Origin: Vitrella brassicaformis CCMP3155
Taxonomy: Eukaryota; Protista; Chromerida
Direction of reading: 5' to 3'
NCBI GenBank assembly: GCA_001179505.1
Contig: CDMY01000685.1
Span: forward strand, 1 to 30,797
DNA: 30,797 nt
This document shows positions 1,851 through 22,800 of the stretch, in pieces (positions within the stretch are counted from its first letter, which is position 1; the number at the start of each line of letters is the position of its first letter). The translations under genes and the position numbers were made by a program. Under the pieces are notes generated by a model that saw only the letters and a program-made list of their open reading frames with translations, made no database searches and was not told the DNA's origin.

Positions 1851-4800
1851 AAGGGAAGGGGCGATGGCTCCACGACGGCAGCCGTGTGCCGAGCTCCTCC
1901 AGGGCATCTGATGCTGACGGGGCCACATCTAGTAGCACATGGGCGTTGGCGCCTCCGAAGCCGAAGGAGCTCACACCACCGACGCGCGACCTTCCGCCGG
2001 ATCGTGCCCCAAAATCGACGGGTTGTGTGGGGAAGACGACATTGAATGTGTCCGTGTCGATGTGGGGGTTCAGTTGCTGGAAATGCAGGACGGGAGGCGC
2101 GACACCATGCGCCAACGTCAGGAGGAGCTTGATGAGCCCCGCAATGCCCGCTGATCCCTCCAGGTGACCGATGTTGGTCTTGAGTGCGCCCAGCACCAGC
2201 GGATGAGCCATCCGGATCGTATCCGCGCTGAACACATCTCGAAGGGCGCCGACTTCGATAGGGTCGCCGAGGGATGTGCCCGTGCCGTGGGTTTCAACGT
2301 AGGACACGTCGGAAGGTGAGAGGTGGGCCTGAGAAAGACATGCTCGAAGGACCGCTTGCTGCGATGGACCATTTGGCGCCGTCAGGCTGGCACTCCTGCC
2401 GTCGTGGTTGACAGCCGAACCAAGAATGATTGCCAAGAGGCTTGAGCCTTTCGCACGCACAGCGCTGAGACGGCGCAGCACCACCGCTCCCGCGCCTTCG
2501 CCCCTCACGTAGCCGTTAGCCTTGGCGTCGAACGTCTTGGACTGGCACTCAGGTGACAGCATCCGTGCCTTGGAGAAGGCAATGAAGAGGTGCGGGGACA
2601 ACATCAGGTTGACGCCTCCCACGAGCGCGCCAGTCGTTCCTGCACAGAGATGTGAACATGCCGTCAGGAAAAGCCTCACTCTCGCTATTCACTGGACTTA
2701 CCTAAGCCATTCGTTACTCCGTTCTCGATGCTCTTGACGGCCGAGTCCATGGCGACCAATGAAGAGGAGCAGGCTGTGTCGATCGTCATGCTGGGTCCCT
2801 TGAGACCGAAGATGTAGCTGATACGATTGGACAAGATGCTGCTGGCAGATCCAGTGCCAACGTAGCTGCTGTTCTTGTTCACGAAGCTGAGGAAGTTCCA
2901 GTCATTGTTGCAGTTACCGATGTAAACACCCATGTCGGCGCCCAGTAGAGCCTCCCGTGAGTAGCCCGCTGAAGCCAGGGCCTCGTAGCCGACCTCAAGC
3001 ATCATGCGCTGCTGCGGGTCCAATGTCTGCACCTCGAGGTTGCTGATGTTGAAGAAGCTGTTGTCGAACAGCTCAGCTCCCTGTACGAAAGCTGCCCTCC
3101 TGACGTAACACTTGCCGATTGCATCGGGGTCCGCGTCGTAGAACTCGTCCATGTCCCACCGGCTGAGGGGGACCTCCGAGACACAGTCCGTGCCGCTCAA
3201 GAGCATCGACCACAGAGCTGACAACGATGTAGCTCCTCTAGGAAGCCGACAGGCAGCGCCGACCACGGCGGCTCGCTCCCTGTGCCCACTCAACGTCGTC
3301 TTCGACATACGCTTTTCAGCCTTGGTTGCACGAGCCCTTCTTGACGAGCGGTCAGAAGTGTGGATCTTCTCAACGATCAGGTTAATGATGGCGCCGAGTG
3401 TGGGGTAGTCGAAGAGGGTGGTGGCGGGGAGCCTGACGCCCAGTTTGTTGGACAAGGCGTTGCGGAACTCGACGGCTCCGAGCGAGTCGATGCCCAGGTC
3501 CTGGAGCGGCGCGTCGAGGGAAGGGAGATCGCTCTCGGCCACGTGGCCCAGCACTTCGGTAGCGGTCTCCAACACGGTTGCCTTGACAAAGGCGCGCAGG
3601 TCGTCTGCAGCCATGCTCCTGAGCTTGCTGCGCAGCTCACTGTCCACGAGGATGCTGCTGTCGCCGCTGGCAGACGAGGGCGAGATGTGGTCGAAGAAGG
3701 TCGGCACCAGCTCATAGCGTCGAAGGAAGACATTCCAGTCGCCGAAGGGCTGGCATCCCACCACGCTGCTGCTGCTGGTGGCGCTGATGCCATCAATGGG
3801 ATTGTTGTTGACGAGGCAGAGGTCATGTAGCACCCGAAGGCCCAGGTCGTTGCTGATGCCGCGCAGTCCCACTTTGCTGAGGTGCTGTCGAAGGTTGGCG
3901 GCCATTCCCTGCTCCACCCACGGGCCCCACTGGATCGACTGGCCACTCAGCCCGCTCGCACGGCGATGCACCGCAAGGGCGTCGAGGCAAGCGTTGGCCG
4001 CCGCGTAGTTGGTCTGGCCAAAGTTGCCGTACAGTGATGCAGCCGACGAGAACAAGACGAAGTGGTCGACGTGGTGGTTGTGGCCTGAGGTGGTCGTGGC
4101 GTCATGGAGGTTCCACGCGCCTCCCACTTTCGGTCGGTAGACTTGCTCGATGCCCGTCACAGTCTGCTGCTCCAGTGAGGCGTCGGCCAGGACACCGGCC
4201 GCGTGGAACACGGCCTTGACAGGAGGCAGCCCCTCAGTTGTGGTGATGCGGGCCAGGAGCCCCTCGCAGGAGCTGAGGCTGCTTACGTCACACGCCATGA
4301 GGCTGATGATCCCTGGCTGCTTCGGCCCACTGCTGTTGCTGGCACTGGCGTCATTGGACGCGACCAAGGGCGCAAGCTCCCGCCAGAGGGCGCTGTCCTC
4401 CACTTGAGGAGAGGGGCGCCCCTTTCGCGACACCAAGACGACGTGCTTGGCGCCCTCAACCACGAGCCATCGCGCCACGACCAGCCCGAGGCCGCCAAGG
4501 CCTCCAGTCACCACATAGGTGCCGCCTCCTCCTGTGGCCGTCGCAGATTGATCCGTTTGGTGGCGGCCAGAGAGGTGCAAGTTGTTGTCGGCGATGCTGG
4601 GGAGGCGGATGACGACCTTGCCCATGTGGTGGGCGCGCTGCATGAAGCGGAATGCCGCGAGTGCGTCATGCTTGCCGCCGGCACTCGTCATGTCGAAGGG
4701 GTGGATGGGTGGAGGGGTCACATGGCCCGTTTCCACGAGCCTCGTGATCCTCTTGAGCATCGTCTGGAACCAGCCGGGGTCGCTCTCCACCATGTGGTCG

Positions 4801-7800
4801 ACAGCGATGGCCTCGTAAGTCACGTCGGGACGACACCGACGCATCTGGGCGGGACTGTAGATGCCCCGCTTGCCCAGCTCCATGAACCGGCCACCCTCGC
4901 CAAGCAGCCGAAGGGACGCCTCGAGCATCGCACCGGGCAGTGAGTTGAGGACAACGTCCACCTTATTGTCGTCGGCCGCCCCTTGTCCGTTGTCTTTGTC
5001 TCTGTTGCTGCTGTTGCTGTGCAGGGTGAGGAACGTGTTCATGTCGGTCTCGAAGGCTGCAGGGTCCCTCGAGGTGGTGATGTACTTGACGCCCAGCGAC
5101 CGCACGAATGNNNNNNNNNNNNNNNNNNNNNNNNNNNNNNNNNNNNNNNNNNNNNNNNNNNNNNNNNNNNNNNNNNNNNNNNNNNNNNNNNNNNNNNNNN
5201 NNNNNNNNNNNNNNNNNNNNNNNNNNNNNNNNNNNNNNNNNNNNNNNNNNNNNNNNNNNNNNNNNNNNNNNNNNNNNNNNNNNNNNNNNNNNNNNNNNNN
5301 NNNNNNNNNNNNNNNNNNNNNNNNNNNNNNNNNNNNNNNNNNNNNNNNNNNNNNNNNNNNNNNNNNNNNNNNNNNNNNNNNNNNNNNNNNNNNNNNNNNN
5401 NNNNNNNNNNCACTTTGCTGAGGTGCTGTCGAAGGTTGGCGGCCATTCCCTGCTCCACCCACGGGCCCCACTGGATCGACTGGCCACTCAGCCCGCTCGC
5501 ACGGCGATGCACCGCAAGGGCGTCGAGGCAAGCGTTGGCCGCCGCGTAGTTGGTCTGGCCAAAGTTGCCGTACAGTGATGCGGCCGACGAGAACAAGACG
5601 AAGTGGTCGACGTGGTGGTTGTGGCCCGAGGTGGTCGTGGCGTCATGGAGGTTCCACGCGCCTCCCACTTTCGGTCGGTAGACTTGCTCGATGCCCGTCA
5701 CAGTCTGCTGCTCCAGTGAGGCGTCGGCCAGGACACCGGCCGCGTGGAACACGGCCTTGACAGGAGGCAGCCCCTCAGTTGTGGTGATGCGGGCCAGGAG
5801 CCCCTCGCAGGAGCTGAGGCTGCTTACGTCACACGCCATGAGGCTGATGATCCCTGGCTGCTTCGGCCCACTGCTGTTGCTGGCACTGGCGTCATTGGAC
5901 GCGACCAAGGGCGCAAGCTCCCGCCAGACGGCGCTGTCCTCCACTTGAGGGGACGGGCGCCCCCTTCGCGACACCAAGACGACGTGCTTGGCGCCCTCAA
6001 CGACGAGCCATCGCGCCACGACCAGCCCGAGGCCGCCAAGGCCTCCAGTCACCACATAGGTGCCGCCTCCTCCTGTGGCCGTCGCAGATTGATCCGTTTG
6101 GTGGCGGCCAGAGAGGTGCAAGTTGTTGTCGGCGATGCTGGGGAGGCGGATGACGACCTTGCCCATGTGGTGGGCGCGCTGCATGAAGCGGAATGCCGCG
6201 AGTGCGTCATGCTTGCCGCCGGCACTCGTCATGTCGAAGGGGTGGATGGGTGGAGGGGTCACATGGCCCGTTTCCACGAGCCTCGTGATCCTCTTGAGCA
6301 TCGTCTGGAACCAGCCGGGGTCGCTCTCCACCATGTGGTCGACAGCGATGGCCTCGTAAGTCACGTCGGGACGACACCGACGCATCTGGGCGGGACTGTA
6401 GATGCCCCGCTTGCCCAGCTCCATGAACCGGCCACCCTCGCCAAGCAGCCGAAGGGACGCCTCGAACATCGCACCGGGCAGTGAGTTGAGGACAACGTCC
6501 ACCTTATTGTCGTCGGCCGCCCCTTGTCCGTTGTCTTTGTCTCTGTTGCTGCTGTTGCTGTGCAGGGTGAGGAACGTGTTCATGTCGGTCTCGAAGGCTG
6601 CAGGGTCCCTCGAGGTGGTGATGTACTTGACGCCCAGCGACCGCACGAATGCCTTCTTAGCGTCGCTTCCCACCGTCCCAAACACCGTCGCGCCCAGCGT
6701 GTGGCACAGCTGGATGGCGGCCATTCCGACGCCTCCCGAGGCGGCATGGACCAACACTCGGTCGCCGGCCTTGACCCTTGCCAGGTCGACGAGAGCGACT
6801 TGGACGGTGGCCATGATGACGGGCAAGGCCGCCGCCTGCTCGTGCAGCAACGAGGGCTGAGTCACCGGCAGCCGATGCACCAGCCGAGCGTCTGTCGCCA
6901 CGTAGCTCTGCAGACAGCCGGGAGCCAAGCCGAAGACGTCATCGCCGACCCTCACGTTGTCGACACCAGCAGTCGCCACGCTCACGACAGTGCCGCAGCA
7001 GTCGCCACCAGGAGCACCTGGTCCATTGAGTGATTGATTGATTGAGTGATTGATTGACAGACAAACAAACAAACGAACAGACAGACAGACAGACAGACAG
7101 AGGTACATCCATGTACTAAGCACTAAGCAGGCACAGTGCACTGTGAACTGTCTGCTTGTCTGTCTGTCTGTCTGTCTCATTGGCTTCTCGCTTTGACTGA
7201 CTGACTGACTGCTTTGACTGATTCACTCATTGATTCACTAATTGATTCACTCATTGACTGATTGGTTTACCTGGGTCTCCCGGGTAGAGTCCCATGACGT
7301 TGAGCACATCCCTGAAGTTGAGACCCACCGCCCGGACTCGCAGCAGGCAGGTGCCCGCGGGCAGCTCTCCTCCTTTGTCGGCATCTTGGCCGACACTGGC
7401 CCGGCTCAGGGGCGGATATGGACACGGCCGCAGCTTGAGGTTGGAGATGGCGCCTCGCTCAGACAGGTGCAGCTCCACAGCCCCGCGTGGCGCTATGGCG
7501 CTCTTGGCCAGTCGGGCAGCGTACAAGTGCTCCCCTCTCACAGCCACCTCCACCTCTCGGTTGGCGCCGCGACACACAGACAGGAGACGCTCCAGCTGTG
7601 ATGAGACCACCTCGACTCGACTGGCGCTGGGGGAGAGTGGCTCGATGTCGACACAGCCGACAGCCACTGGACGGCCGAAGGTCTGCTCCAACTCCAGCCG
7701 AGCGCACCGGGCGAGGCCCCACAGACCACCGCCCTCAGCCAGCCACCTGGGAAGAACCGCCGACGGTGTCCGAGACGACAGAGAACAATGTGATGGTGAC

Positions 7801-10800
7801 ACTGAGACGCTCTGCACGCCGCAGGACACCAACCACACGAAAGGCACCTTTGCCGGCGCCTGCCTGGGGGCCTCAGACTGAGGCTCCTCTTGTTGCTCGT
7901 TTGAGGCCGAGCGTGTGGGTCGCAAAGCCAAGAGAGCCTTGCAGATCTGAAGAGCAGCGTGCGTGTGCTCCACCGCCGCCTGGACCGCCCCGCCCTCTTG
8001 CTGTCTGTCCTCTTTTGCCGTGCTGTCATCAAACAGCGACCCAAGGTAGATGATCGTGTCCCAAGAGCCCTCGACCAGGCGCTGCTCGAGCCGCTTGGGA
8101 GCGGCCATGACGCTGGCAGCCGTCCAGTGATCCACTTGCATCGTCATGCCAGAGCCAGCGGTGTTCTTGTCTGCCCATTGTGTGGCCAGTGCCTCCCCCA
8201 CACCTCCCTCGCTGCCGATCACCAGCACCGAGGAGGGAGGCTCGGCAGAAGGGGAATCGCTGCTGGCTTCCGTGTCCGCCTCGGTGGTGGTCTCGTCGTC
8301 TTGTTGGCTGACTTGCTCCTCGTCGGACGGTCGTCGGATCGATGGTGCCTCCGGAGTGAGGTGCGTCCACTGGACCTCCCAGAGGACGTCCCGAGGGACC
8401 TGCACGGCCGGAGCAGCCAGGTCGATCTGCCGCGCGGTGACGCTGTCCAGGCTGGCCACCAGTTTGTGATGCTGGTCGAAGAGCTGCACGTCGAAACTGG
8501 CCTGCCCGGCAGTCGCCGACACCAGCTTGACGTGACTCCAGAAGACAGGAGCGGAGGGTCCACCCACAGCCACCTTGAGGCGGCCCAGGACAGCCCTGTC
8601 GATCGAGAAGGGCACCATCGCTTTGGCCTTGCTCTTGGCCGCCTCGCCGGCCATGGCGAAGAGAGCTGCTGCCGACTGGAGGGCCCCATCGAGGATGGCC
8701 GGGTGGATGCGGAAACCCTCCTCAAAGTCGTCCAGGCCGCTGCCATTCGTGCCTCCAGGCACCAGCTCAGCCAGCACCTCTGTGGCAGGCATCTGACCGC
8801 CCTCCTCGCCCTCGCTCTCGCCCCTCTCGGCGGTCGGAGGCCTCAAGACGTGAACGCGGCGGACCGTCTGGAACCGGGGACCGTACTCGAGACCGACCTC
8901 ACGAAGCTTCGCGTACAGCTCAGCCCCCTCGACCGTCTGGACAGCGGCGGAATCGTCAAAGGTGGCCTTCCTCTCAAGCAGCTCTGCCAGGGTTGCGCCT
9001 TGACAGTCGGAGGGAATCGATTGGTCCACACTCGTCACACCTGGCGCTTCTGACTGCTCTGGCACCTCACTCACACGCAGGACAGTCTTCGCGTGTACTT
9101 GTGACAGCCTGTCACCGCCATCCGCCCCTTGATGTTTTCCCATGTAAGACGATATCTCCAGCTCTATGCCGTCCTGTTGAGAGCCGGCCCTTCCACTCAC
9201 TTCCAGCGTTGGCAGCTCGCTCAGCGCTGCAAGAATCAAGGGCTGCTGGAACTCCACTCCTTCCAGGTACATGACATTCGACGATGGGAGGGCAGCGCTT
9301 GCCGACGCTGTGAAGATCTCGACGAAGCCAGTTGCAGGCATGACGGAGCGCTTGGATACGGCATGATCTTGAATCAGTTGGCAGACTTCGCGCCGTAGAC
9401 GTCCCACCGCCCGCCATGCATTCTTGTCCACGGGGTGCACGCGTTGCGTGAAGGGGTTGGCTGGAGGCTTCCACGGGAAGGGAGAGTGGGCCCACGTTGG
9501 CAGTGGGACAGCAGGCAGCTGGCCGCCGGCTCCCGTCTTCACTTCCATGATGACGTGAGCATTTGCGCCTCCAAAGCCAAATGAGCTGACACCGCCTATC
9601 AACATGCTGGCTTGCTCTGACGGTGTCAGTGCCGTCGCTTCGGTAGGGTAGATGACGTGGAAGTGTTCATCCACATCGATGTGGGGGTTCAGGGCCGTCA
9701 AGTGCAGGTTGGGCGGCGACACCCCGTGGTGAAGCGTCAGCAGGAGCTTGATGAACCCCGAGATGCCAGATGAACCTTCCAGATGACCGACGTTGGTCTT
9801 GAGTGCGCCCATGACCAGTGGTCTGTCGCTGGCCCTTCCCCTGCCCAGCACGGCTCTGATGGCGCCCACCTCGATGGGATCGCCCAGACTCGTACCTGTC
9901 CCGTGAGTCTCAATGTACGACACTGCGGAGGGACTGGCGCCGGCTTGCGCCAGCGCTCGAGACAAGACCTCTTGTTGAGCGGGTCCATTGGGAGCAGTAA
10001 GGCTTGCGCTTCTCCCATCGTGGTTGACGGCACTCCCGAGCACCGTTCCGAAAGACACGAGGGACTCACTTGCCGCAAAGGCCGACGGGTGACAGACCAG
10101 CACGGCGCCACACCCCTCACCGCGTGCAAATCCGTCAGCCCTCTCGTCAAAGGTCTTGCATCGTGAGTCCCGCGACAGCATGCGAGCCCTCGAGAAGGCA
10201 ATGAATGGCTGGGGAGACAGCATCAGGTTGACACCCCCCACCAGCGCGGCAGGGCATGTCTGGGTGCTGATGCTCCTGAGGGCCACATCCATAGCCACGA
10301 GCGACGAGGAGCAGGCCGTGTCAATAGTGAGACTGGGGCCCTTGAGGCCAAAGATGTACGAGAGGCGATTCGAGACGATGCTGGCGGCAGCGCCAGTGCC
10401 GGCGTAGGCACTGCGGCCACGGTCGAGTGACTGGACCAGAGCGCCCCAGTCGTTGTTGCAGCAGCCCATGAAGATGCCGATTTGTTGGCCCACCAGCGCC
10501 GCCTTGCTCAGGCCAGCGCTGTGCATGGCCTCATAGCCGACCTCGAGCATCAGCCGCTGCTGGGGGTCCATGGTGAGGATCTCGGCGGGGCCGATCTTGA
10601 AGAATGTGTTGTCGAACATGTGGGCGGCGTCCATGAAGGCTCCCTCACGAGAGTAGCAGCAGCCAGTCGCGTCGGGGTCGCTGTCCAGGACGGCCTCCAT
10701 GTTCCAGCGGGACACGGGCACTTCAGCGATGCAATCTCTCTGGGACATCAGCATGTCCCAGAAGCCTGTTGGGCTGTTGACCCCCCCAGGAAGACGGCAG

Positions 10801-13800
10801 GCCACACCCACCACCACAGCCTTCTCACGTCCACAGCTGTCCATTCCCGCCTCGGAGCTTGGCTGTGAGGATGTGCCGAACATTATCGTCTCGCCGTCAT
10901 GTCCGGTGGCACCCGTCGAGGCAGTCGAGGGCTCCCTAACTTGCTCCACGATGTAGTTGATGATGGCACGCAAAGTGGGATAGTCGAACAGGGTGGTCGC
11001 GGGCAGCTTGACGCCAATGCGCGCTGATAGGTCGTTGCGGAATTCGATAGCGCCCAGTGAGTCGATGCCGAGCTCTTGGAGCGGCGAGTCGAGAGGGGGT
11101 GCACTGATGTCGACCACTCCCTCACCCAAGGCATCAGCCGCTGCCTCAACTACCACCGACTGGATGTACGCTCGCAGCTGTGAGGAATTCAAGTCCATGA
11201 GATCCACCTTTGCAGCAACCTCCGTCCCGTCTGCCGCACGCGGCTTCCTTTCCGCCTGAGTGGTCCGCACCCTCAGCACATGTCGGGCTTTGTTTGGCGT
11301 GGGCGACGCGATCAGAGACACTTGCAGGGCTTCCATCAGGAGCCGCGGTTCCAGTTGAAGCAATGACGCATCCCACCGAGCAAGATACGACCGGTGGGAG
11401 GGCTTGGAATTGAGGATGCGGCTGAGGGCCTCAACAAGAGGCAAAGAGGGGACAGTGTGAGAGTCTGCTGTCTTGCCCAACGCCTCGAGAGTGACGACGG
11501 TTGATGCAGGCATATGCACCTGCATGGTCTCAACCAGACATCGAGCCCGGACCAGCTGCTGCTTGTCGTCTTGTGCGGGCTGTGCATTCACAACGCACAG
11601 ACACCAGGCGATGGGTGGACCCTCCCTGCTGGCCAAAGCCTCGGGCCACGACATATCTCCACATCGGATGCTGCCATCCAGTCCGTCATATCGCAGCCTC
11701 ATGGTGGTCACACGGACGCTGTCGGAGAGGTCCATCGCCCATGCGGCGAGATTCGCAGGGGGCGACTCCCATGAAGCGACGATGACGTCCTCGCATCCCT
11801 GCTCAACAGTGAGAAGTTGAGCTGCTGGGAGGGCAATGGCAGCCACATCACCGCAGATGAGGACGCATCGGGTCCTGGAGGCCGCGGCTGGGGTGAGCGG
11901 CAGGGGTCTCGGCACAGCGACGCGATCGTCGGCAGCGTTGCGCACGACCATGACGCTCTGATGCCCGAAGATGCCGTCGGTGGGAGTTGAGTACTCCAGG
12001 AGGAATCCCGTGTCATCGAAGGCCCTTTGCCAGCCCGACTGGGGCAGCAGGGGGCCGTCACGACGCATGTCGGAGTCAGTAAAGCGCCACCAGCCCTCGA
12101 GCAGGCCGAAGGTGGTCTGCAGCATGAAGCTGTGCCGCGTCAGCTCCGATATGATGAGTAGTCCGTCAGGCTTGAGTGAGGCCTTCAGATTGCGGAGCGT
12201 TGCACGGAGGTCCTGCGTTGCATGCAGCACGTTGACGGCAATGGCCAGATCAAACATCCCTGTCCCAAGGCCGCTGTGACGCGGATCGTTCTCGACGTTG
12301 AAGAGGCAGTACTCGACGTTGGAGTACTCGGCGAATCGTTTGGCGGCATTGCGCAGGAAGTAGTCGCCCAGATCAGTGAAGAAGTAGGTGGTGCGGCTGG
12401 CATCGAGCTTGGGCAGGACGCGGGACGTTGTGGCCCCAGTGCCGGCACCCACTTCGCATATGTGCATTCGCTGTGCGCCCACTGCCAGCCGATGCCGGCA
12501 TATTGCGTCGGCGACCTCCATGACCACACCGTTGCTGAACCGCGACGGGATGGTGTCCTGGTAGATGGCGGTGGCCAAGTCCATGGACCCTTCAGGGAAG
12601 ATCAGCTCCACTGCATCGACGTCACCCTTCAGGGCTTCCATCAGCCGAGGGGCGCAAGCCTGCGCCAGGGACGCCTCGTGCGACACCTCCTGTGGGGCGT
12701 TGGCGAGCGAGTCTCGGCCCTGAGTGGGGGAAGCGTCCCCATCTGAGTGCAGGGTGTCGACGAGGCTGCGGTACAGCCTGAGGTGGTGTGGATGGACCAC
12801 GTCAGCTTCCCGGACTGTCTTGATGGCCGACTGGCAGTACGTCCGACACGCTTGCTCGACTCCCACAAACCCATCCGCCCACTGTCGCGCTTCATCCGAC
12901 TCGAGCGCACGTTGAATTGACGCAGACAGATGCTCACTCAGGGACAGGGGAGCCGAGCCATCCGCACCAGTATCGTCGCGCACACCGCGACCAATCCGAA
13001 GGACGACAACCTCACTGTCACTGGCCGATCCCTTGTTCTTCTCCACTTCATTCGACAGTCGACAACTGTCCTCCACGTCCACCTCGCGCACCACCGCCCT
13101 GCTAGCGTCCGCCGTGTCACTCCGAAGCAGCTTGCGGAGCCCATGTGTGTCTGCGGCCCAAGCCTGCTGCGCGAAGCTGCGTCTTGATGCTTCGAGATGG
13201 CCCACAGCTGTCCAGCTGCTCTCCGGCGGCGTCCCAGTGGTGTCGATGCGCTTCAGAAGGCGTGCCTCCGTCACTGCCTTGTTGGTCCTAATCTCTCGTT
13301 GTGCGGCATTCTCAAGCCAGCCAACCACCTTGTCGCCCACTTTGAGGTGTGATACGGCATCTCCGACCTCCGCAACGATGCCGCCACATGCCAGGAAAGT
13401 GCTTTCTTGTGCACGGGACGGGAGGGCCAGTGCGTGGATACACAGCGCCACTTGTGTCGGCGGTGACGCTGGGGAAGTGGGTGTGCCGCTGTCAGGCTGC
13501 GGATCAGCTGCCCACCTGACCCGCACTCCCTTGTTGGCGGAGGCCTGTGTGTCCTGGGACAGGAGGACAGCCGGCGACACGTCGATGGACAGCGGGACGT
13601 CTGTGAGTGTCCGATACTCACGCGGCGCCAACAGAGTGCCGTCCCGATAGGCCCACGCAGCCTCAGAACCAGCGGAGCCATCTTGTGTCTTGGACGCTAT
13701 CGTGCCGATGACCGTGCGGATGACTGAGCCCAACACTGCGAGGGACGGAGGCGCTCCGATGAAATCAAGAGTGCGGATGGTGCACTTGGCGCCGTCATCA

Positions 13801-16800
13801 CCACTCTCGAGGCTCCGGAAGGTGAGCAGCGAGTCATAAGACGGCACATGACCGTCAGGTCTGTCGACCAGCACCAGAGTCCACACAGGTATGTCGAGAC
13901 CCAAAGACATCAGCGCCCGCACAAAGGCGCCAAGCTCTTCTTTTTGGTGCGCTGCATCCTCCGACTGAGTGCGACACCGATACAACAGCACGACCTCTCC
14001 TGGTCTGCCAGGGAGACGCTTCGCTGCGTTGGCAACTGCCTCCACGCTAGAACACACTTCCATGTGCTTGGTGCCTTGATCTGGCCAGAGGGCATCATAG
14101 AGCTCTGCAGCCCCATCCGTGAGCAGAAGCGCCACACTGTTTAAGGCCGAGCTGACGGGATGCTCCAAGGGGACCCAGCTCTCCTCAGACAGGAGCGTGC
14201 GAGCAGAGGAAGTTCCCCCCGCTGTGGCTGCTTTCTTCGACTTGGCTTCCTTGGCCATGTCCAGTCGGGAGAAGAATGGCGTGTGGGGGACGAGGCGGAA
14301 GTACATCTCCCAGCGGATGGGCTGGCAGCATATGACGTCAGTGGTCGACACGTGAGTCTGAACGGCCCACAGGCTCCGCAGCCCGAGGTCGTTGGTGACA
14401 GCAGCGAATCCCATCTTGTCGAGTTGGCTCTGGTTGACGATCTGTGCCGCCTTGCCCTGCTCGGTCCAGACGCCCCACTGGATGCTGTTGCCTGCAAGGC
14501 CCTGGGATCGCCGATATGTCACCAGAGCGTCGAGGCACGCGTTGGCAGCCCCATGGTTGGACTGGCCCAAGTTGCCCAGAAGACCAGCAATCGACGAGAA
14601 CACCAGGAAGGTGTCGGCCTGCACCCGCATCTCACCGAGGAGGTCGTGCAGCGCCCAGGCACTCGTCACTTTGGGTCCGTAGACATCCGCTATAGTCTCG
14701 AGCGTCTGGTTGCCGACGGCAGCGTCACTCAATGTCCCAGCAGCATGAATGACCGATTTGGCCACCAACCCCTCCCTCTGGAGTTGCGCGAGGAGGGCGC
14801 GGCAGTCTTTGACGGAGCTCACGTCGCACTTGGCTGGACGCAGTGTGATTGACGAACCATCCGTCGCTTCGGTACTCTGCATGATGGCCGTGAGGCGCTG
14901 CCACTCCTTGCTCTCCTTCATCTCCTCAGTCGGCTGGCCTCGTCGCGACACGAGGATGATGTTCCTGGCGCCGTGCTCAATCAGCCATTCAGCGACCACG
15001 AGACCCAGGCCGCCAAGGCCGCCAGTGATGACGTATGCGTAGCGGGAAGCCCCCGCCGGCCTCGCCGCCTGTCCCTGGATGGCCTCGAGCAGCGGAGCCG
15101 AGGGGATGGTGAGGACAATCTTGCCGATGTGGACCGCTCGCTGCATGAAGGTGAAGGCTGCTGAGCCCCCTTGCTGCTCGTCGCTGAGGTCGAAGGCGTG
15201 AATGAGGGGCGGGGTGAGCTGGTCCGTCGCGATCATGCGATTGATGCGGTTGAGCATGCGGCGGAACCAGACAGGGTCGTCACGGATCATCATGTCAAGG
15301 GCAACAGCTTCGTTGTTGACGTCTGCACGCTCTTGAGCCATCTTGCCCCGGCTCCAGATGCCTCGCTTGCCGATCTCGAGGAACCATCCACCAGGGCGGA
15401 TCAGCGCCAGAGAGAAGGTAATGAACTGACCGCTGAGGCAGTTCAAGACGGCGTCCAGCCGCCCTTCGTCTCCCAGGAACGATCTCATGTCCGTCTGGAA
15501 GCGCTGCGGGTCTCGTGAGCTTGTAATATACTGGACCCCTAGGTGGCGCAGGAGGGTCCTCTTGCGATCGCTGCCTGCCGTGGCGTAGACGATGGCTCCT
15601 GCTCGGATGCAGTGCTGCACAGCCGTCAATCCCACTCCGCCAGTCGCAGCGTGGATCAGCACACGGTCGCCGGCCTTCACGCCTGCCATGTCGCGAAGGC
15701 AGACCTCTACAGTGCCGACGATGATGGGCAGCCCGGCTGCCGCAGCGAAGGACATGTTGGGGGGCTTGAGGACGATTGGCCCAGCGGCTCTGGTCGTGAC
15801 GTATGTCTTGAGGCACCCGCTGACGACGCCATACACCTCGTCGCCCACTTTGAACTGTGCGTCGTCCACACGCGTCACAGTACCACTGCATTCCCCTCCA
15901 GCGTCAGCCGACACTCGTTCAGATGGATAAGCCCCCAGCACAATGAGAAGGTCGCGGAAGTTGAGGCCCGCGGCCCTCACGCGAATCTCCATCTCTCCAG
16001 GGGCCAGCTCTCGTCGCTCCTCAGGTGTCTGAGCACGGAGCTTCATGGTGCTCTTGAGCGACCCTCGGCCCGACAGCTCCAACTCAACAGGCCCTCTCGC
16101 AACCAGGGAGCTCTTGATCAGTCGATGCGCGTAGACCACGTCGGCTCGCAAGGCCAGTTCCGTCTCCCCGTCGGCTGTGAGCCGCGAAGGGCTGGCCGCA
16201 AGGGCCAAGAGCTGGCCTTCCCAGGTCAAGGTGCCCGCTGTGTCAAGATCCACAGTAACGAGGTGGGCAGCGTCCTGTCGCTCGAGCCTTGCGCTTCGCA
16301 GCATGCCCCAGATGCCCGCATGGACGGGTCGACGCTCGACATTGGCATCACGGGAGCGCACCCTGTGGATGCTCGACGTGAAGAACAGGGCTGTCCTGTT
16401 GCCGCTCTTCGAGCTCGAGTCGCCGATGAGTGCTGCTGCCACTTGCATGGCCCCGAACAAAGTGTGCTGCGCATGGACCTCGCAGCTCAGTCCAAGCAGA
16501 CACATGACCGTCTCCCCCCGTCCCTCCGCCAGCAACGTGGCGACATCCTCCTTGACACTGGCCGTGGAGGAGGCATCGCACCACACGACACCTGCAGCCG
16601 GCGCCTTCAGGCCTTTCGCGATGGCAGCGACGAGGGCCTCTTGGGATCGCTCGGCCACAATGATCGGCCCCACATCTTGCTCAGTTGTTGCCGCTTCGTG
16701 AGACTCCAACGTGAGGTGGGGGATCCACTTGGTCTCCCACAAGTCGCCATCTGGCTGCAGGGTCGACACACTCTTGTTGCCGCCCAGCGACAGCTCCCTC

Positions 16801-19800
16801 AGACGAAGCTTCTCGATAGACGCCACCTCCGTACCTGTCACAGACAAGACAAGACAAGGAGAGAGAAGGGATCACGTCACGTGACAAAGAGAGACTGAAA
16901 TGGTAGACACACACAAGGACTTGTGTGTGTCGTACCAGTCGATCCATCGCTTGACTCGTATATGGTAATGTCGACAGTGGCGGTGGATGGCGTGCTGTCG
17001 GTGATCCTCACGTGCGACCACAGCTCCTTGTCTTGTACCACAGCCCCAGGCCGGAGCCGCACACGTCCAATGATGAAGGGCACCATGGCCTTGTTGGCAC
17101 CGCCTGTCCGCTCAACAAGACAGGCTGCAGCCTGCAGGGCCCCATCCAGCACCCTCGGCGACGAGTGCAGGAAGCGCTCATAGGACGTCACTGAGTGGTC
17201 TCCCTTGATAAGCCCAAGAGCTTCTGACTTGCCTTTGTAGATCTCACGGAGCGTCTGGTAGGTCGGGCCGTAACACAGGCCGGCGTCCTCCAGTTGCCGG
17301 TAGAGCTCATCAATCTTGCCAACACCATCGCAGCGAGAGCGGATCTCAGCGATGTTGGCGGAGCCGCTCGAGAGCATCGGGGCTGCTGAGACGCGTCCAG
17401 TCACGTGAACCAGCTGCTCGTCAGACTCCCTTCGGCTGCCAATCTTGAACGCACCATCCTTGAGCAGCGTGCACCTTAAGGTGTGCGGCGAAGAAGCGCT
17501 GGTAAGGATGAGCGGCGCCTCGAAGCCCACATCCTCTATGGTGACGACATAGGATCGCACGCCTCCTCTCGGCCCCTTTGCCCCCCTCAGCTGGCGGTCA
17601 AGGGCTGCACTCATGGCGATCTCCATGTACCCCGCCGCCGGCCATATCAGTTGCTTGGCCACGACGTGGTCTGCCACCAGCTGCCTCACAGAGCCATCGA
17701 TCCGCGACTCGTATAAGACCACCGAGTCGTCGACCTGTCCAGCATCCTTCTTGGGCCTCCCGGCGATGAGGGGGTGCCGCAGCTCGGGCCACACGAACGA
17801 CTGGCGGTTAGTGAAGAGGTCGCGGTTGACCTGCACAGCCACATGGGTTTTCCGGGCCGCAGCCACCTCCTTGACCAAGTCTGCGAAGCTCGTGGAGCCC
17901 TCCTCTGCAGAGCTGGACCCTATCCACTGCTTGGACGCTGCGACGCGGCCTGTCAGACACTGCTTGGCCATGGTCAGCAAGACGGCCTTGGGCCCGATCT
18001 CGATGAATATGCTGCCGCCCGAGTGGTCAGCGCTGGCTTGCACAGCGCTGGCAAACCGCACGGGCTTGAGGATGTGGGAGGCCCAGTAGCTGGCGTCCTG
18101 GAGGATGTTCGTGGCCATCTCCCCGGTCACGGTCGAGTAGAAGTGGCAGTGGGGTGGGGCCAAGGACGTCTCCTCGACGAGGCGCGTGAAGGACTCCTTG
18201 ATGCCCATCATGAGATTGGAATGGAAGGCATGCGACACTGTCAGGTACTTGCAAGATCGGGTCGCTCCGAGGATCTCCAGGACCTGCTTGACAGCCTCGT
18301 CACGTCCCGAAAGCACCAAGCTCCGTGGACCATTGACGGCGGCGATGCTCACCAGCTGAGCAGCGGACTGCGGCAGCTGGCCCAGCGCCGCCTCGGCTTC
18401 TTCCTCACTCTTACGGATGGCAACCATGACGCCACCGTCCCGCGGCAGGTCACTCATGAGCCGAGATCGCTCCGACACGAGACGCAGGCCGCCCTCGAGC
18501 GTCAGAACTCCCGCAGTGACTGCAGCGACGTATTCGCCGAGGCTGTGGCCGACGACGGCGTCGGGTGTGATGCCGTGTGCCTTCCACAGCTCTGCCATGG
18601 CATACTCGAAGGTGAAGAGAGCGGGCTGGGCGTAGCGGGTGTCGTTGACGTCAGCACTGCCGTCGAAGATGATGTCCTTGATCGAGTAGCCCGCGTGGGC
18701 CATGAGGTACACATCACACCGGTCGAAGGCCTCACGGAAGGCATCCTCAGCCTCGTATAGCGTCTTGCCCATGCCGGCGCTCTGCGACCCCTGGCCAGTG
18801 AACAGGAAGACCACCCCCGGCAGCGCCTTCCGAGGGGCGTCCTCCTCGCAACTGCCGTGCTTCTCCACCAGTGTCGCCATGGCATCAGGGTCGCCCTCCG
18901 AGCAGCACACCGATGAGTTGGTACCTCCAAAGCCGAAGGAGCTCACTGTGAGCGTGAGCGGCCCCTCAGATGACAGGGCCATTGGCTGAGTGGGGAAGAC
19001 CACTGGGAAGTCACCTGGGACGATGTTGTGGTTGAGGCTCGCGAGGTGCAGGTTGCCTGGCGCTTGGCGGTTCATGAGCACCAGCACAATCTTGATGAAT
19101 CCTGAGATGCCCGCTGCGCCCTCGAGGTGACCGATGTTGGTCTTGAGAGCGCCTAGCACCAGCGGTGACGACGCACTCCTGTCCCTTGCGTAGACGGCCA
19201 TGATCGAGTTGAACTCTATGGGATCGCCGAGGGAGGTGCCCGTGCCGTGACACTCCAGCATCGACACATCCGACGGCACCTTGTTAGCGTAGGCCAGGGC
19301 CGTCTCAAGGCACCTCTGTTGCGACGGGCCATGGGGTGCCGTCAGGCTCAAGCTTCTCCCATCCTGGTTGACGGCAGTGCCTTGCAGGGTGGCGAAGACG
19401 CTCAAGTCTCCTAGCGTCACTTTCTCAAACGTCTCGAGCACCACCACACCGCACCCCTCGCCCCTGACGTACCCGTCGGCGCTGTCGTCGAATGTGCGAC
19501 ACCGGCCCTCCGGGGACAGCATGCGGGCCTTGGAGAAGACCATGAAGGGCAGCGGGGCCGTCATGACCTGTACACCTCCAACGAGTGCGCCGCTACATCG
19601 TCCCTCACGCAGAGAGTGGAAGGCCACGTCCATGGCCACCAGCGACGACGAGCACGCTGTGTCGACGCTGATACTGGGGCCCTTCAATCCAAGGACGAAC
19701 GACAGACGGTTGGCGACGATGGACGCGGCGATGGCCGTGCCCGTGTAGGGCGTCGGGATGGTTTCTTCACGGCTTGACAGGATGGCCCAGTCGTTGGAGC

Positions 19801-22800
19801 AGTTGCCCACAAACACACCCATGTCGGCGCCCCGCACGTCTTTCAGACTGAGCCCGGCACAGTCGAGGGCGCTGGTAGAGACCTCCAGGAGTATGCGCTG
19901 CTGGGGGTCCATCGTCACGGCCTCGCTGGGAGGGATGCCGAAGAACGAGTTGTCGAAGAGGTCGATGTCGTCCAGAAAGCCTCCCTGTTTGACGTAGTAG
20001 GACCGGCCAAACTTCTCGACATTGGGGTCGTAGAGGCCCTCAACGTCCCAGCGCATCTGAGGCATCTCGGTGATGCAGTCCGTCTGCGTCATCATCATGT
20101 CCCAGAAAGCCAGGGGGCCGTCCACGCCGCCAGGCAGACGACACGACATTCCAACCACAGCAAGGCCTCGAGACTTTCCCGAGACTGCTGCTGAAGTGGG
20201 CGTTGTCGAGGACTCTCTCGCCTTGGGCTGTTTATCGTCCTCGAGGGTAGTGGCCACGTATGTGACGATGCCTTCGAGAGTGGGGTGGTCGAAGAGTGCC
20301 GTGGCGGGGAGGCTGACGCCCAGCCTGCTGCTCAAACTGTTGCGGAACTCGACGGCGCCCAAGGAGTCGATGCCGAGGTCCGCCAAGGGCATGTCCATTG
20401 GCGGCTTCTCGTCAATGCCCAACACGTCACGGGCAGTATCCATGGTGATCCGTTCCAGCATCTGGCGGCGCTTGGTACCACTCAGGCTGCGCAGCCAGTT
20501 CTGTGCGTCAAGGCCTTGTTGGGCTGCTTTGGCATCAAGCTGCAGCGGCTTGACGCGAGAGAAGAGGTTGTTGTAGTGCTGGCCCGAAAAGGCCCTGAGA
20601 AGGAGACTCGTGTCGAGTGGCTGGGCTGTCGTGACACCGCCGGCAGGGTGGGCGAGGAGGGAGTCGAGCAGACGGAGGGCCAGCTCGTTGGAGATGGGCG
20701 GGATGCCCGCGGCCTTCATCTTGTCCATGCTGCCCGCCGCTGTCGCCATGCCTTGGTCCGACCACGGACCCCACTGGATGCTCATTGAAGGACGCTGAAG
20801 GAACGGACCAACACGACACACACACCAGACAGACAGAGACAGACAGAGGGGACACGTTCAGTACAGATGGGTGACGAACACGCACATGAGTGGTCTGCTC
20901 ACCTCTGACGATTGTCGATAGCTGACGAGTGCGTCCAGACAGGCGTTAGCGGCACTGTAATTGCTCTGGCCCACGTTGCCCAACAGGCTCGTGATGGACG
21001 AGAAAGCCACGAAGCGCTGGAAAGGCGACTTCAGCTGTTGTTCCGCTCGGTGGATGTTCCACGCTCCCACAGCCTTGCCGACGTATGTGGTGCGGATGGT
21101 GTCGGGTGTCTGCTGGGCGAGTGGGGCGTCGCTGAGTGCGCCTGCGGCGTGGAAGACGTGTGAGATGCGAAGGCCCTCCTGCTCGAGACCGCTCATGACC
21201 TCCAGCACACTCGTCTCAGCTCCGACGTCGCAGCTGATGGCCCTCACAGCTGCCCTGGAGTGCTGAAGCCGCGCCCATCGATCGGCCATCGACGCATCTG
21301 GCGCGCCTCGCCGTGAGAGAAGAGCGATATGGCGGGCGCCTTGCTCCACCAGCCAGTCGGCGAGCACCAGGCCCAGCCCGCCTGTGCCGCCCGTGACGAC
21401 ATGCACCCCAGATGCATCTGTGGCCGTGTCGACGGAGCTGGTGACGTTGACGATGACCTTGCCGATGTGCTGAGCTTGCTGCATGAAGCGGAAGGCCGCT
21501 GTGAGGCCGGTGCTCTTGTCACTGCTGTAGATGTCGAAGTTGCAGAGAGGGATTGGCTGGATGGACTGCCCCTCTGCCAGGGTGCTGATGTCGTCGAGAA
21601 GCTGACCGAACCACTGCGGGCGGGCCTCGATCATGTGGTCAAGGGCCACTGTCGTGTAGTGCACGTCTGGCCGCACACTCTTCATCTGCTCCTCCGTCCA
21701 GATGCCGCGCTTGCCCAGCTCCACGAACCGGCCGCCGTGGCCCAAGGACTCCAGTGAGGCCGGGATGTAGTCGTCAATCAGAGAGTTGAGCACCACAGTG
21801 GCGAGGCCCCCACTGGCAGTGAGGCTCTGCATCTCCTGCCTGAACTGTGAGGCGTCTCGTGAGGTTGCGATGAATACGATGCCCATCTGCCGAAGGAAGT
21901 CTTGCTTCTTGGCCGATCCCGCCGTGGCAATCACGTCCGCTCCCACTCGTCTGCAGTACTGGATAGCGGCGAGCCCCACTCCACCGGTGGCCGCATGGAC
22001 CAACACACGGTCACCCTTCACCACCTTGGCCGCGTAGCGCAACGAGAACTCCACGGTGGCAAACACGCTGGGCAGGGAGGCCGCAGCGCTGAATGACCAG
22101 CCGGACGGCATGCGGGCCAGCGTCCACTCGCTCGTCGTGGCGTAGGTCTTGAGGCACCCAGGGGAGATGCCGTAGACGCTGTCACCCACCTTGAACCGCC
22201 CGTCTGTCTGGTCGGCAGTGCCGATCCGGACGACTGTCCCCGCACAGTCGCCACCGGGCGGCCCAGGGTCGCCGGGATACAGCCCCATGACATTGAGGAC
22301 GTCCCGGAAGTTGAGGCCGATGGCGCGAATCCGAACCTCCACTTGCTGAGCCGACAGGTCGATGGCACGGGCCTCTTGAGGCATCGGGTGGAGGGACAGG
22401 TTGGAGATGGCCCCTCGCTCAGACATGACCACCTGGATGGGCCCCCTCTGCTGGATCCCCTGTGCTGGATGGACCCTCGGGACAAGGGTGCTGCCCTGCC
22501 GCACACACATCTCCATCTCGTTGGACTGCTGCACAAGCCAGTCCGGCAGGGCCTCCTTGGTCAGCTCATCGACGTCGACACATGCGATACGATCCGCCAT
22601 GCCCGTCTCCACCTCACACTCGAGGCGAGCGGACCGCGCAAGGCCCCACAGCCCACCATGCACTGGCAAGCCGTCGAATGCAGTCGCGGCGCCCATCTGC
22701 TTGCGGGTCAGCAGCACCGTCCGGGGCATCTGGCGCTGAGCACGATGGACACTTAGGGCGGTCTGCACGAGCCTGACAGCTCCACAGATAACTGCAATGG

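What the first reader, a model, noticed from the sequence alone, without database searches (positions are those of the whole stretch)
11180..14290. About 1,000-aa insert between KR2 and ACP3: intact C-methyltransferase nested in a vestigial pseudo-KR/ER/KR set
Seen: SIQWG-to-ACP spacing is about 0.27-0.31 kb in modules 1 and 3 but about 3.3 kb in module 2. The extra sequence reads in order: (1) a pseudo-KR-like segment ending AWAYRDGTLLAPREY (13615-13658), like the E.AxRxG...RL ends of the structural subdomains before each ER; (2) an ER N-terminal relic GIVAEVGDAVSHLKVGDKVVG (13318-13383); (3) a complete MT; (4) a decayed Rossmann start VLICGDVAAIALPAAQLL (11815-11876). Established: PKS C-MTs normally sit between DH and ER/KR, not after KR. 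Inference: a second reductive loop was fused in, decayed to a scaffold, and now presents an MT at a non-canonical position.
Basis: partly seen in the sequence, partly recalled or inferred. Interest (0 to 1): 0.8.

Follow-up and report, generated by a model that had tools for sequence, protein, structure and literature searches.

The report
Decayed second reducing loop keeps methyltransferase
One module of a giant polyketide synthase gene of the alga Vitrella carries, after its working reducing domains, a second run of about 1,000 residues in which only the methyl-adding domain is intact; the finding is real, but it is a variant of known designs rather than a new kind of enzyme.

Summary
On the minus strand, the SIQWG motif of KR2 lies 3.4 kb from the ACP serine in module 2, against 0.4 kb in modules 1 and 3. 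The extra ~1,035 codons are one open, coding-like frame.

What each part is:
- **Methyltransferase (MT):** a complete PKS C-methyltransferase (CurJ C-MT, E 1e-53) with the SAM, His and Glu motifs kept.
- **Upstream flank:** a statistically solid relic of an enoylreductase (ER) N-terminus. Before it lies a stretch with only modest support as a KR structural subdomain.
- **Downstream flank:** the first ~80 residues align, in the right register, with the start of a KR catalytic subdomain, but the glycine-rich NADPH motif is destroyed. The last ~160 residues are unrecognisable.

Two points need correcting:
- An MT after KR is not non-canonical. Among 361 classified MTs in this MT's relatives, about 200 sit KR-MT-ACP.
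- The MT was probably not inserted into the loop. The order DH-[KRs]-ER-MT-KR-ACP exists intact in rare metagenomic PKSs, and the alga's MT sits inside that group, with moderate support.

No RNA data were available and both structure predictions failed. I rate it a new variant of a known kind, of moderate interest.

The parts
15111..16001 (-). ER2 of loop A, the module's apparently working enoylreductase (ORF aa 283-579)
   Evidence: Pfam ADH_N, ADH_zinc_N and ADH_zinc_N_2. The alignment with ER1 and ER3 keeps the HAATGGVG motif.
14259..15038 (-). KR2 catalytic subdomain of loop A (aa 604-863). It has His in place of the catalytic Tyr (SNHGAANA, 14538-14561).
   Evidence: Pfam KR, E 3e-52. Motif seen. 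It clusters with KR1 and KR3 of the same gene, SH-aLRT 97.
14181..14258 (-). Short Lys/Ala/Ser-rich linker between KR2 and the second loop (aa 864-889)
   Evidence: Translation. No relic of an ACP, KS or DH was found here.
13614..14180 (-). KRs': probable vestigial KR structural subdomain (aa ~890-1078), ending in AWAYRDGTLLAPREY
   Evidence: Modest support only:
- Language-model look-alikes at 0.93 / 0.92 to clusters carrying SpnB_Rossmann plus ADH_N.
- hhalign against a KRs profile: E 0.035 over 102 colinear columns.
- 14 of the top 40 weak hits fall in KRs zones, against 6.3 +/- 2.5 for shuffles.
- The end motif is colinear with the KRs ends of loops 1 and 2A and of P0140 and P0141.

Pfam and my own HMMs did not detect it.
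13251..13613 (-). ER': relic of an enoylreductase N-terminal (GroES-like) part (aa ~1079-1199). The best-conserved core is at 13269-13394. It also holds a Pro/Ser-rich low-complexity stretch.
   Evidence: - Pfam ADH_N, E 0.003.
- ER HMM: 21.7 bits against at most 3.9 in 300 shuffles.
- hhalign: probability 81%, E 1.2e-5.
- BLASTP colinear with the ER of P0124, E 0.002.
- About 120-127 aa are missing relative to P0124 between the ER motif and the MT. That is about the size of the ER nucleotide-binding subdomain (size from my own knowledge).
12951..13250 (-). Unrecognisable spacer (aa 1200-1299) between the ER relic and the MT. It is possibly the remnant of the ER C-terminal part and the ER-MT linker.
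   Evidence: No match in any test. It still reads as coding by frame and codon usage.
11928..12950 (-). Intact C-methyltransferase domain (aa 1300-1640), comprising the helical lid and the class I SAM-binding core
   Evidence: - Pfam Methyltransf_12, E 4e-18.
- CurJ C-MT (5thy), E 1e-53; DisA, AprA MT2, the citrinin PKS and the LovB MT are also hit.
- Motifs EVGAGTG, FTD, NVLHAT, SELT and GWWRFTD are kept.
- 7,930 relatives at E <= 1e-10.
- It groups with MTs that sit directly before KRc.
11682..11927 (-). KRc' proximal part (aa 1641-1722): the MT-KR linker and a decayed Rossmann start. VLICGDVAAIALPAAQLL replaces the vLITGGxGxLG motif.
   Evidence: - MT-KRc didomain HMM: 308.1 bits against 294.3 +/- 0.56 when the C-flank is shuffled, with 0 of 300 shuffles reaching it. 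The alignment runs through to the 'cDv' strand.
- 25 of the top 40 weak hits fall in KRc, against 5.5 +/- 4.3 for shuffles.
- The spacing from the end of Methyltransf_12 to the Rossmann start is 99 aa, against 93-95 aa in P0134 and P0124.
- Language-model look-alikes are all KR, at 0.84.
11208..11681 (-). KRc' distal part (aa 1723-1880). It is unrecognisable. No Lys/Ser/Tyr/Asn catalytic motifs are detectable.
   Evidence: No significant match. The MT-to-ACP distance is 30-75 aa shorter than in P0124, P0140 and P0134.
10950..11156 (-). ACP of module 2 (aa 1898-1966), with the GIDSL phosphopantetheine serine at 11055-11069
   Evidence: Pfam PP-binding, E 1e-13. Motif located.

Best explanation
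Module 2 of this Vitrella brassicaformis type I PKS reads:

KS-AT(malonyl)-DH-[KRs-ER-KRc] - [KRs'-ER'-MT-KRc'] - ACP

It carries two beta-processing loops in tandem.

- **Loop A** is the gene's own house type and looks functional.
- **Loop B** is of a different, rare type, KRs-ER-MT-KRc, with the MT immediately before the KR catalytic subdomain.

In loop B:
- Only the C-methyltransferase has been kept.
- ER' has shrunk to an N-terminal relic and has lost about 125 residues.
- KRc' has lost its NADPH motif and all recognisable catalytic residues.

**Working model (inferred).** After KS2 condenses a malonyl unit, the MT of loop B methylates the alpha-carbon of the beta-ketoacyl-ACP with SAM. 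KR2, DH2 and ER2 of loop A then reduce it, giving a methyl-branched saturated unit. The decayed KRs'/ER'/KRc' remains persist as an open, weakly constrained scaffold or spacer that holds the MT next to the ACP.

**Origin (inferred).** Either a house-type loop was copied in front of an older ER-MT-KR loop, or the MT-bearing loop was recombined in behind KR2. The redundant reductases then decayed.
For: **Shown**
- Domain order and the size of the excess.
- One open, coding-like frame.
- An intact PKS C-MT.
- The ER relic.
- The KRc-like start of the C-flank, in correct register and spacing behind the MT.
- Modest signals for KRs'.
- An intact DH-ER-MT-KR-ACP order in P0124 (Pfam) and an ER-MT-KR-ACP order in P0140.
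- MT directly before KRc, with a gap of 14-29 aa, in six of the fetched proteins.
- The alga's MT lies with those MTs: all five nearest rows by path, a 7-row clade at SH-aLRT 78, then a 12-row clade that holds all ten 'direct' MTs.
- KR2 belongs with KR1 and KR3 of the same gene, SH-aLRT 97. Loops A and B therefore have different ancestry.
- AT2 carries GHSLG and HAFH, the malonyl type, so a methyl branch needs the MT.
- DH2 keeps its His and the D..Q motif. ER2 keeps its nucleotide motif.
- The flanks are single-copy in DNA assemblies, and the junctions are covered in two studies.
Against: - There is no structural evidence. Both single-sequence AF2 models failed, at pLDDT 40 and 35.
- KRs' and the distal C-flank are not detected by Pfam, by my own HMMs or by PDB sequence search.
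- No homologue of either flank was found, so conservation and constraint cannot be measured.
- There is no RNA evidence that the whole stretch is in the mature mRNA.
- Support for the MT tree is moderate only (54-79).
- The MT core is multi-copy, so the assembled link across it is less certain.
- KR2 has His for the catalytic Tyr. If that inactivates it, the reduction steps of the model fail. I did not find direct evidence that His-type KRs are active.
Confidence: 0.68

Rival explanations
1. The flanks are lineage-specific linker or low-constraint filler with no reductive-loop ancestry. This would be simply a KR-MT-ACP module of the common (trans-AT-like) type with unusually long linkers, and the ER-like and Rossmann-like strings are small chance or convergent resemblances.
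For: - KR-MT-ACP is by far the commonest context of related MTs.
- Pfam finds nothing above threshold in the flanks.
- Most of the flank length has no detectable homologue.
- AF2 gives no confident fold.
- Codon bias is about half that of the catalytic domains.
Against: - The ER match is far above shuffles and colinear.
- The Rossmann start lies at the exact spacing behind the MT seen in MT-KRc didomains, and it adds 14 bits.
- In KR-MT-ACP modules the gaps never exceed 210 aa (KR to MT) and about 94 aa (MT to ACP). Here, measured the same way, they are about 510 and about 255 aa.
- The MT groups with the 'directly before KRc' class, not with the KR-MT-ACP class.
Confidence: 0.17
2. The arrangement is partly an artefact. 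Either in-frame introns inflate the insert, or the assembly joined two loci across the multi-copy MT core, so that the real protein has a shorter or different KR-to-ACP region.
For: - The gene has other ORF breaks that look like short introns (16848-16876 and 20822-20857).
- The weakest codon-usage window (aa 1111-1170) is a Pro/Ser-rich stretch.
- Contigs of four DNA runs break inside the MT core, where depth is 4-5 times higher and variant contigs exist.
- The window contains a 300-N gap with near-identical ER-KR copies on both sides.
- No RNA run was available.
Against: - There are ~1,100 codons without a stop, where the other frames of the same strand show 11-13 stops per flank.
- Frame 0 is best in every window.
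- The order KRs'-ER'-MT-KRc'-ACP is colinear with intact relatives on both sides of the MT. A chimeric join would not be expected to produce that.
- The junctions KR2/N-flank, N-flank/MT and C-flank/ACP are each covered by contigs from two studies.
Confidence: 0.1
3. Loop B is not vestigial. KRc' or ER' retains a non-canonical catalytic or substrate-handling role, such as epimerisation or gating, on the methylated intermediate.
For: The frame has been kept open over about 700 non-MT codons. KR-like domains with non-reductive roles are known in PKSs (my own knowledge).
Against: - The glycine-rich nucleotide motif is gone (CGDVAAIA).
- No catalytic Lys/Ser/Tyr/Asn region can be aligned.
- ER' lacks about 125 residues, about the size of its nucleotide-binding subdomain.
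- Codon bias is relaxed.
Confidence: 0.05

Closest known systems
PKS modules with the order DH-[KRs]-ER-MT-KRc-ACP, or MT directly before KRc: metagenomic proteins P0124 (module at aa 3919-5499), P0140, P0141, P0134; also P0056 (Lasiodiplodia theobromae) and P0073
   Same: - The order ER, MT, KR catalytic subdomain, ACP is the same.
- The spacing from MT to the KR start is the same (93-99 aa from the end of Methyltransf_12).
- The alga's MT is nearest to these MTs in the tree.
   Different: - In those proteins ER and KRc are intact and are the module's only reducing loop.
- In the alga they are decayed, about 250 aa shorter in total, and preceded by a complete additional KRs-ER-KRc loop.
- I found no paper naming the ER-MT-KR order. 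That search covers open-access text only.
KR-MT-ACP modules of AT-less (trans-AT-like) bacterial PKSs, e.g. P0121, P0122, P0123, P0125
   Same: The MT lies after a KR and just before the ACP. The MT is the same C-MT family, at 33-38% identity.
   Different: - The median KR-to-MT gap is 124-134 aa (maximum 210) and the median MT-to-ACP gap is 42-49 aa (maximum 94). The alga has about 385-420 extra residues before the MT and about 205-220 after it.
- There are no ER or KR relics in those linkers.
- The alga's MT does not group with this class.
CurJ C-methyltransferase (PDB 5thy/5thz) and other solved PKS C-MTs (DisA, AprA MT2, the citrinin PKS, LovB)
   Same: The domain family and motifs are the same. 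The match runs over query 78-328 at E 1e-53, with NVLHAT and the Glu of the proposed His-Glu dyad conserved.
   Different: CurJ's MT sits between DH and KR in a cis-AT module. Nothing comparable to the decayed flanks is present.
Pseudo-methyltransferase and pseudo-ketoreductase of animal FAS, and the inactive ER of fungal LovB (my own knowledge; LovB is also hit)
   Same: A megasynthase keeps decayed catalytic domains as structural parts of its modifying region.
   Different: In animal FAS the MT is the decayed part and the reductases work. Here the MT works and a duplicate set of reductases has decayed. The domain order also differs: DH-MT-psiKR-ER-KR.

Membership tests
PKS C-methyltransferase domain (CurJ C-MT type, class I SAM-dependent) | Significant sequence match to solved PKS C-MTs and to the Pfam Methyltransf_12 core | tested here: met
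   CurJ E 1e-53, DisA E 9e-38, LovB E 1e-20. Pfam E 4e-18 against a cut-off of 30 bits.
PKS C-methyltransferase domain (CurJ C-MT type, class I SAM-dependent) | SAM-binding motif I (ExGxGxG) and the acidic residue after beta-2 | tested here: met
   EVGAGTG at 12435-12455. YFFTDLG aligns with CurJ YIFTDIG.
PKS C-methyltransferase domain (CurJ C-MT type, class I SAM-dependent) | Catalytic His (NVLHAT) and partner Glu | tested here: met
   NVLHAT is identical to CurJ. The Glu of IISELT aligns with CurJ LVLYEAT. The role of the His is confirmed by mutagenesis in a fungal modular PKS (PMC13749307).
PKS C-methyltransferase domain (CurJ C-MT type, class I SAM-dependent) | Methyl transfer to beta-ketoacyl-ACP | not testable with these tools
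   Needs an enzyme assay.
PKS enoylreductase (MDR superfamily) - the ER' segment | GroES-like N-terminal part | tested here: met
   A partial match only, covering about 42-50 residues of the profile: 21.7 bits against at most 3.9 for shuffles, hhalign E 1e-5.
PKS enoylreductase (MDR superfamily) - the ER' segment | NADPH-binding Rossmann subdomain with the GGVG motif | tested here: not met
   There is no alignment beyond the N-terminal part. About 120-127 residues are missing relative to P0124. It is therefore a relic, not an ER.
PKS ketoreductase catalytic subdomain - the C-flank (KRc') | Rossmann start at the expected position, homologous to KRc | tested here: met
   The anchored didomain HMM gains 14 bits, with 0 of 300 shuffles reaching it. 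25 of the top 40 weak hits fall in KRc. Unanchored HMMs were not significant.
PKS ketoreductase catalytic subdomain - the C-flank (KRc') | TGGxGxLG nucleotide motif and Lys/Ser/Tyr/Asn catalytic residues | tested here: not met
   The motif reads CGDVAAIA. No catalytic half can be aligned. It is a relic, not a KR.
KR structural subdomain (Pfam SpnB_Rossmann type) - KRs' | Truncated Rossmann fold preceding ER, ending in the E.A.R.G....RL-type motif | tested here: inconclusive
   The motif and colinearity are present. There is no Pfam or HMM hit, and the AF2 model is unusable.
Module type KRs-ER-MT-KRc-ACP (MT directly before KRc) | Domain order, and an MT-to-KRc spacing of 14-29 aa between domain envelopes | tested here: met
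   The order is colinear. The spacing is 99 aa against 93-95 aa, measured from the end of Methyltransf_12.
Module type KRs-ER-MT-KRc-ACP (MT directly before KRc) | MT phylogenetically within that class | tested here: met
   All five nearest rows by path belong to the class. The clade supports are 78, 54 and 64, none of them strong.

The most novel reading that the evidence does not exclude
ER-MT-KRc defines an undescribed, mainly eukaryotic class of PKS module. Vitrella shows its fate after a second, house-type reducing loop is added: the redundant ER and KR decay into a dedicated scaffold that presents the MT to the ACP. Meanwhile the incoming KR independently acquires the Tyr-to-His change. 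In the PKSs sampled here, that change is almost confined to KRs working behind a C-MT. This would be a natural experiment in subfunctionalisation inside a single module, and a template for grafting MTs into reducing modules.
Probability: 0.25. Interest if true: 0.6.

Novelty: new variant of a known kind. Interest (0 to 1): 0.45.

Why it matters
If the model holds, one PKS module tolerates a roughly 700-residue dead scaffold between its working KR and its ACP, and still uses the MT embedded in that scaffold.
- That bears on how far an ACP can reach, and on where methyltransferases can be grafted when engineering reducing modules.
- It mirrors animal FAS, where the MT is dead and the reductases are alive.
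- It also brings out a rarely noted domain order, ER-MT-KR.

For chromerid biology, it predicts that this synthase makes a SAM-derived methyl-branched, reduced chain. It does not change the general picture of PKS enzymology.

Tried and rejected
**Steps that led nowhere**
- AF2 single-sequence folds of the N-flank (aa 861-1298) and the C-flank (aa 1641-1897) gave pLDDT 40 and 35. They were unusable, so no fold search was run.
- I did not fold with an alignment of KR or ER domains, because that would have imposed the fold being tested.
- Word searches restricted to each flank found no hit. They cover only proteins of 1,759-5,596 aa.
- The exhaustive phmmer search with the whole insert listed only MT matches in its top 150. 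It cannot show flank-only relatives that rank lower.
- PDB sequence searches of the flanks gave nothing significant.
- Unanchored HMMs built from the gene's own KRs and KRc, or from 146 KRc domains, did not exceed shuffles on the flanks.
- A KRs-ER junction HMM and a two-sequence KRs-ER-MT HMM gave no extension into KRs' or the spacer.
- For RNA evidence, only four DNA-like contig sets held the stretch, so splicing is untested.
- Literature strings such as 'ER-MT-KR' returned nothing.
- A search on KR Tyr replacement with MT returned nothing.

**Readings considered and rejected**
- *The insert is a degenerate whole module.* Rejected: there is no trace of ACP, KS or DH in the 26-residue KR2-KRs' linker.
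- *Loop A descends from an MT-KRc(His) loop by loss of the MT.* Rejected: KR2 clusters with its Tyr-type sisters KR1 and KR3.

Full report
**What is there**

The window holds most of a multimodular type I PKS gene on the minus strand. Earlier notes of this scan name the organism as the chromerid alga Vitrella brassicaformis.

Pfam gives this order:
- FAAL-like AMP-binding pieces and an ACP
- KS-DH-ER-KR (ORF 25639..20858)
- ACP-KS-AT-DH (ORF 20821..16877)
- ER-KR-...-MT-...-ACP-KS-DH (ORF 16847..7251, 3,198 codons)
- ER-KR(-ACP-KS)

Residue n of the long ORF starts at window position 16847-3(n-1).

**Checking the observation**

The distance from the SIQWG motif of each KR to the GIDSL serine of the next ACP is about 0.40 kb in module 1, 3.40 kb in module 2 and 0.43 kb in module 3.

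The insert reads as coding sequence:
- The roughly 1,100 codons between KR2 and the ACP contain no stop, while the two other frames of the same strand carry 11-13 stops in each flank.
- GC by codon position has the coding pattern.
- A codon-usage model trained on the rest of the gene prefers frame 0 in every 60-codon window.
- The flanks reach only about half the score of the catalytic domains (5.5-6.6 against 11.8-12.8). That fits relaxed constraint.

DNA assemblies from two independent studies cover the junctions KR2/N-flank, N-flank/MT and C-flank/ACP. They break inside the MT core, where k-mer depth is 4-5 times higher and variant contigs exist. Near-identical MT copies must therefore lie elsewhere in the genome, while the flanks are single-copy. 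None of the runs held RNA, so splicing could not be tested.

**The methyltransferase**

Residues about 1300-1640 (window 11928-12950) are a complete PKS C-methyltransferase:
- Pfam Methyltransf_12, E 4e-18.
- CurJ C-MT, E 1e-53, followed by DisA, AprA MT2, the citrinin PKS and LovB.
- Motif I (EVGAGTG), FTD, the catalytic-His motif NVLHAT, the partner Glu and GWWRFTD are all kept.
- An exhaustive search found 7,930 relatives at E <= 1e-10. Every one of the best 150 matched the MT part only.

**The upstream flank (aa 864-1299)**

*ER relic.* This part is solid:
- Pfam ADH_N, E 0.003.
- 21.7 bits against an ER profile built from 58 PKS ERs, where 300 shuffles reach at most 3.9.
- hhalign probability 81%, E 1.2e-5.
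- A colinear BLASTP match to the ER of P0124, E 0.002.

Only the N-terminal, GroES-like part is recognisable. Between the ER motif and the MT, the alga is 120-127 residues shorter than P0124. That is about the size of an ER nucleotide-binding subdomain.

*KRs'.* The roughly 190 residues before the relic end in AWAYRDGTLLAPREY. That string is colinear with the ends of the KR structural subdomains of loops 1 and 2A and of P0140 and P0141. It is followed by a GVRVRWAA strand that matches the 'veVrVrA' start of ER. Statistical support is modest:
- Language-model look-alikes at 0.93 and 0.92 to clusters carrying SpnB_Rossmann plus ADH_N.
- hhalign E 0.035 over 102 colinear columns.
- 14 of the top 40 weak phmmer hits fall in KRs zones, against 6.3 +/- 2.5 (maximum 12) for shuffles.
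- Pfam and my HMMs do not detect it.

*Spacer.* Residues 1200-1299 match nothing.

**The downstream flank (aa 1641-1897)**

I built an HMM from ten MT-KRc didomains in which the KR follows the MT directly. It aligns the alga continuously from the MT, through the linker, into the first ~85 KR positions:

`ylitGGlgGLGLltarvl.vesgarklvLlSrSg...cDv`
`VLICGDVAAIALPAAQLLTVEQGCEDVIVASWES...RYDG`

- It scores 308.1 bits against 294.3 +/- 0.56 when the C-flank is shuffled, and 0 of 300 shuffles reach it.
- 25 of the top 40 weak hits of this stretch fall in KRc domains, against 5.5 +/- 4.3 for shuffles.
- Language-model look-alikes are all KR, but only at 0.84.
- The glycine-rich nucleotide motif is destroyed.
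- The distal ~160 residues cannot be aligned to anything.

Both single-sequence AF2 models failed, at pLDDT 40 and 35. There is therefore no structural evidence either way.

**What the neighbours say**

I annotated 266 distinct PKS proteins fetched through their MT similarity, and classified the context of 361 MT domains.
- About 200 sit KRc-MT-ACP. Their median gaps are 124-134 aa and 42-49 aa, and Pfam confirms the order for P0121, P0122, P0123 and P0125.
- 58 sit MT-[KRs]-ER.
- 49 sit MT-[KRs]-KRc.
- Only 10, in six proteins, sit directly before KRc, with a gap of 14-29 aa.

Two of the rare proteins carry the exact order of the alga's insert, with every domain intact:
- P0124: DH-[KRs]-ER-MT-KR-ACP
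- P0140: ER-MT-KR-ACP

Both are confirmed by Pfam. The distance from the end of Methyltransf_12 to the KR start is 93-95 aa in P0134 and P0124, and 99 aa in the alga.

In a maximum-likelihood tree of 91 MT domains:
- The alga's five nearest rows all belong to this 'direct' class.
- It sits in a 7-row clade with the MTs of P0140, P0141 and P0134 (SH-aLRT 78).
- It then sits in a 12-row clade that holds all ten 'direct' MTs (supports 54 and 64).

The support is moderate, but the placement is consistent. The simplest reading is that the MT was an original member of a KRs-ER-MT-KRc loop, and that its reductases decayed around it.

**The first loop**
- KR2 of loop A clusters with KR1 and KR3 of the same gene (SH-aLRT 97). 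Loop A is therefore the gene's house type, and of different ancestry from loop B.
- AT2 has GHSLG and HAFH, the malonyl type, so a methyl branch must come from SAM.
- DH2 keeps its His and D..Q motifs, and ER2 keeps its nucleotide motif.
- KR2 has His at the catalytic Tyr (SNHGAANA).

In my sample, His at that column occurs in:

| KR context | His / total |
|---|---|
| C-MT upstream in the module | 59 / 117 |
| C-MT downstream in the module | 2 / 200 |
| no MT in the module | 2 / 177 |

. The His-type KRs include those of proteins annotated as yersiniabactin synthase and a Lasiodiplodia modular PKS. The change may therefore be a feature of KRs that work with C-MTs, rather than an inactivation. 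The sample is biased, because it was fetched by MT similarity. Activity is not shown.

**Model**

Module 2 = KS-AT-DH-[KRs-ER-KRc] - [KRs'-ER'-MT-KRc'] - ACP.

- *Inferred chemistry:* condensation with malonate, then C-methylation of the beta-ketoacyl-ACP by the loop-B MT, then reduction by loop A. This would give a methyl-branched saturated unit.
- *Inferred role of the relics:* a scaffold or spacer.
- *Inferred origin:* a fusion or duplication put two loops in tandem, and the redundant ER and KR then decayed. Duplications of modules and of single domains are documented for algal PKSs (PMC4661987).
- MT domains in two V. brassicaformis synthases have been noted before, without detail (PMC7464705).

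**Limits**
- No RNA, no structure and no orthologue were available.
- KRs' and the distal C-flank remain assignments by position and weak signals.
- The assembly across the multi-copy MT core is not independently confirmed.

**Verdict**

It is corrected on two points: the position after KR is common, and the MT is native to the loop. It is a new variant of known kinds (vestigial megasynthase domains, and MT-bearing reducing modules), of moderate interest.

Noticed in passing
window 14538-14561 (KR2 motif SNHGAANA); fetched proteins P0001-P0271: His replaces the catalytic Tyr of KR2. Across about 500 KR domains of the fetched PKSs, His at that column is found in 59/117 KRs with a C-MT upstream in the module, 2/200 with the MT downstream, and 2/177 without an MT. 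KR2 nevertheless clusters with its Tyr-type sisters KR1 and KR3 (SH-aLRT 97), so the change arose independently. The sample is biased because it was fetched by MT similarity, and the activity of His-type KRs was not established.
   Followed up: partly
window 5111-5410 and ORFs 7180..5039 / 5531..2685: A 300-N assembly gap sits here, and the ER-KR sequences on its two sides are nearly identical. This is either a collapsed or duplicated assembly, or a very recent tandem module duplication.
   Followed up: partly
window 12000-12600: The MT core has 4-5 times the k-mer depth of its flanks in four DNA contig sets. There are variant contigs with differences at 12114, 12120, 12543, 12546 and 12566. 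Near-identical MT copies must exist elsewhere in the genome.
   Followed up: no
window 16331-16421: Two DNA-like runs hold a contig that skips 89 nt here, with ends AC..GT. It is not a canonical intron on either strand, and 89 is not a multiple of three. It is probably a repeat-related contig variant or an allele.
   Followed up: no
window 16848-16876 and 20822-20857: The PKS reading frame is interrupted between DH2 and the KR structural subdomain, and again inside KR1 about 40 nt upstream of its SIQWG motif. The ORF gaps are about 30-37 nt. These are probably short introns whose exact borders were not determined.
   Followed up: no
L001 (metagenome contig carrying P0140): The contig has 58-64% GC. 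Its PKS is split into same-strand ORFs with short gaps, like the Vitrella gene, which suggests a eukaryotic (protist or algal) source for the ER-MT-KR module class.
   Followed up: partly
window 17900-18830 (AT2, ORF aa 661-985 of 20821..16877): The only AT in the three modules seen carries GHSLG and the malonyl-type HAFH motif. Modules 1 and 3 have KS joined directly to DH, with no AT.
   Followed up: partly
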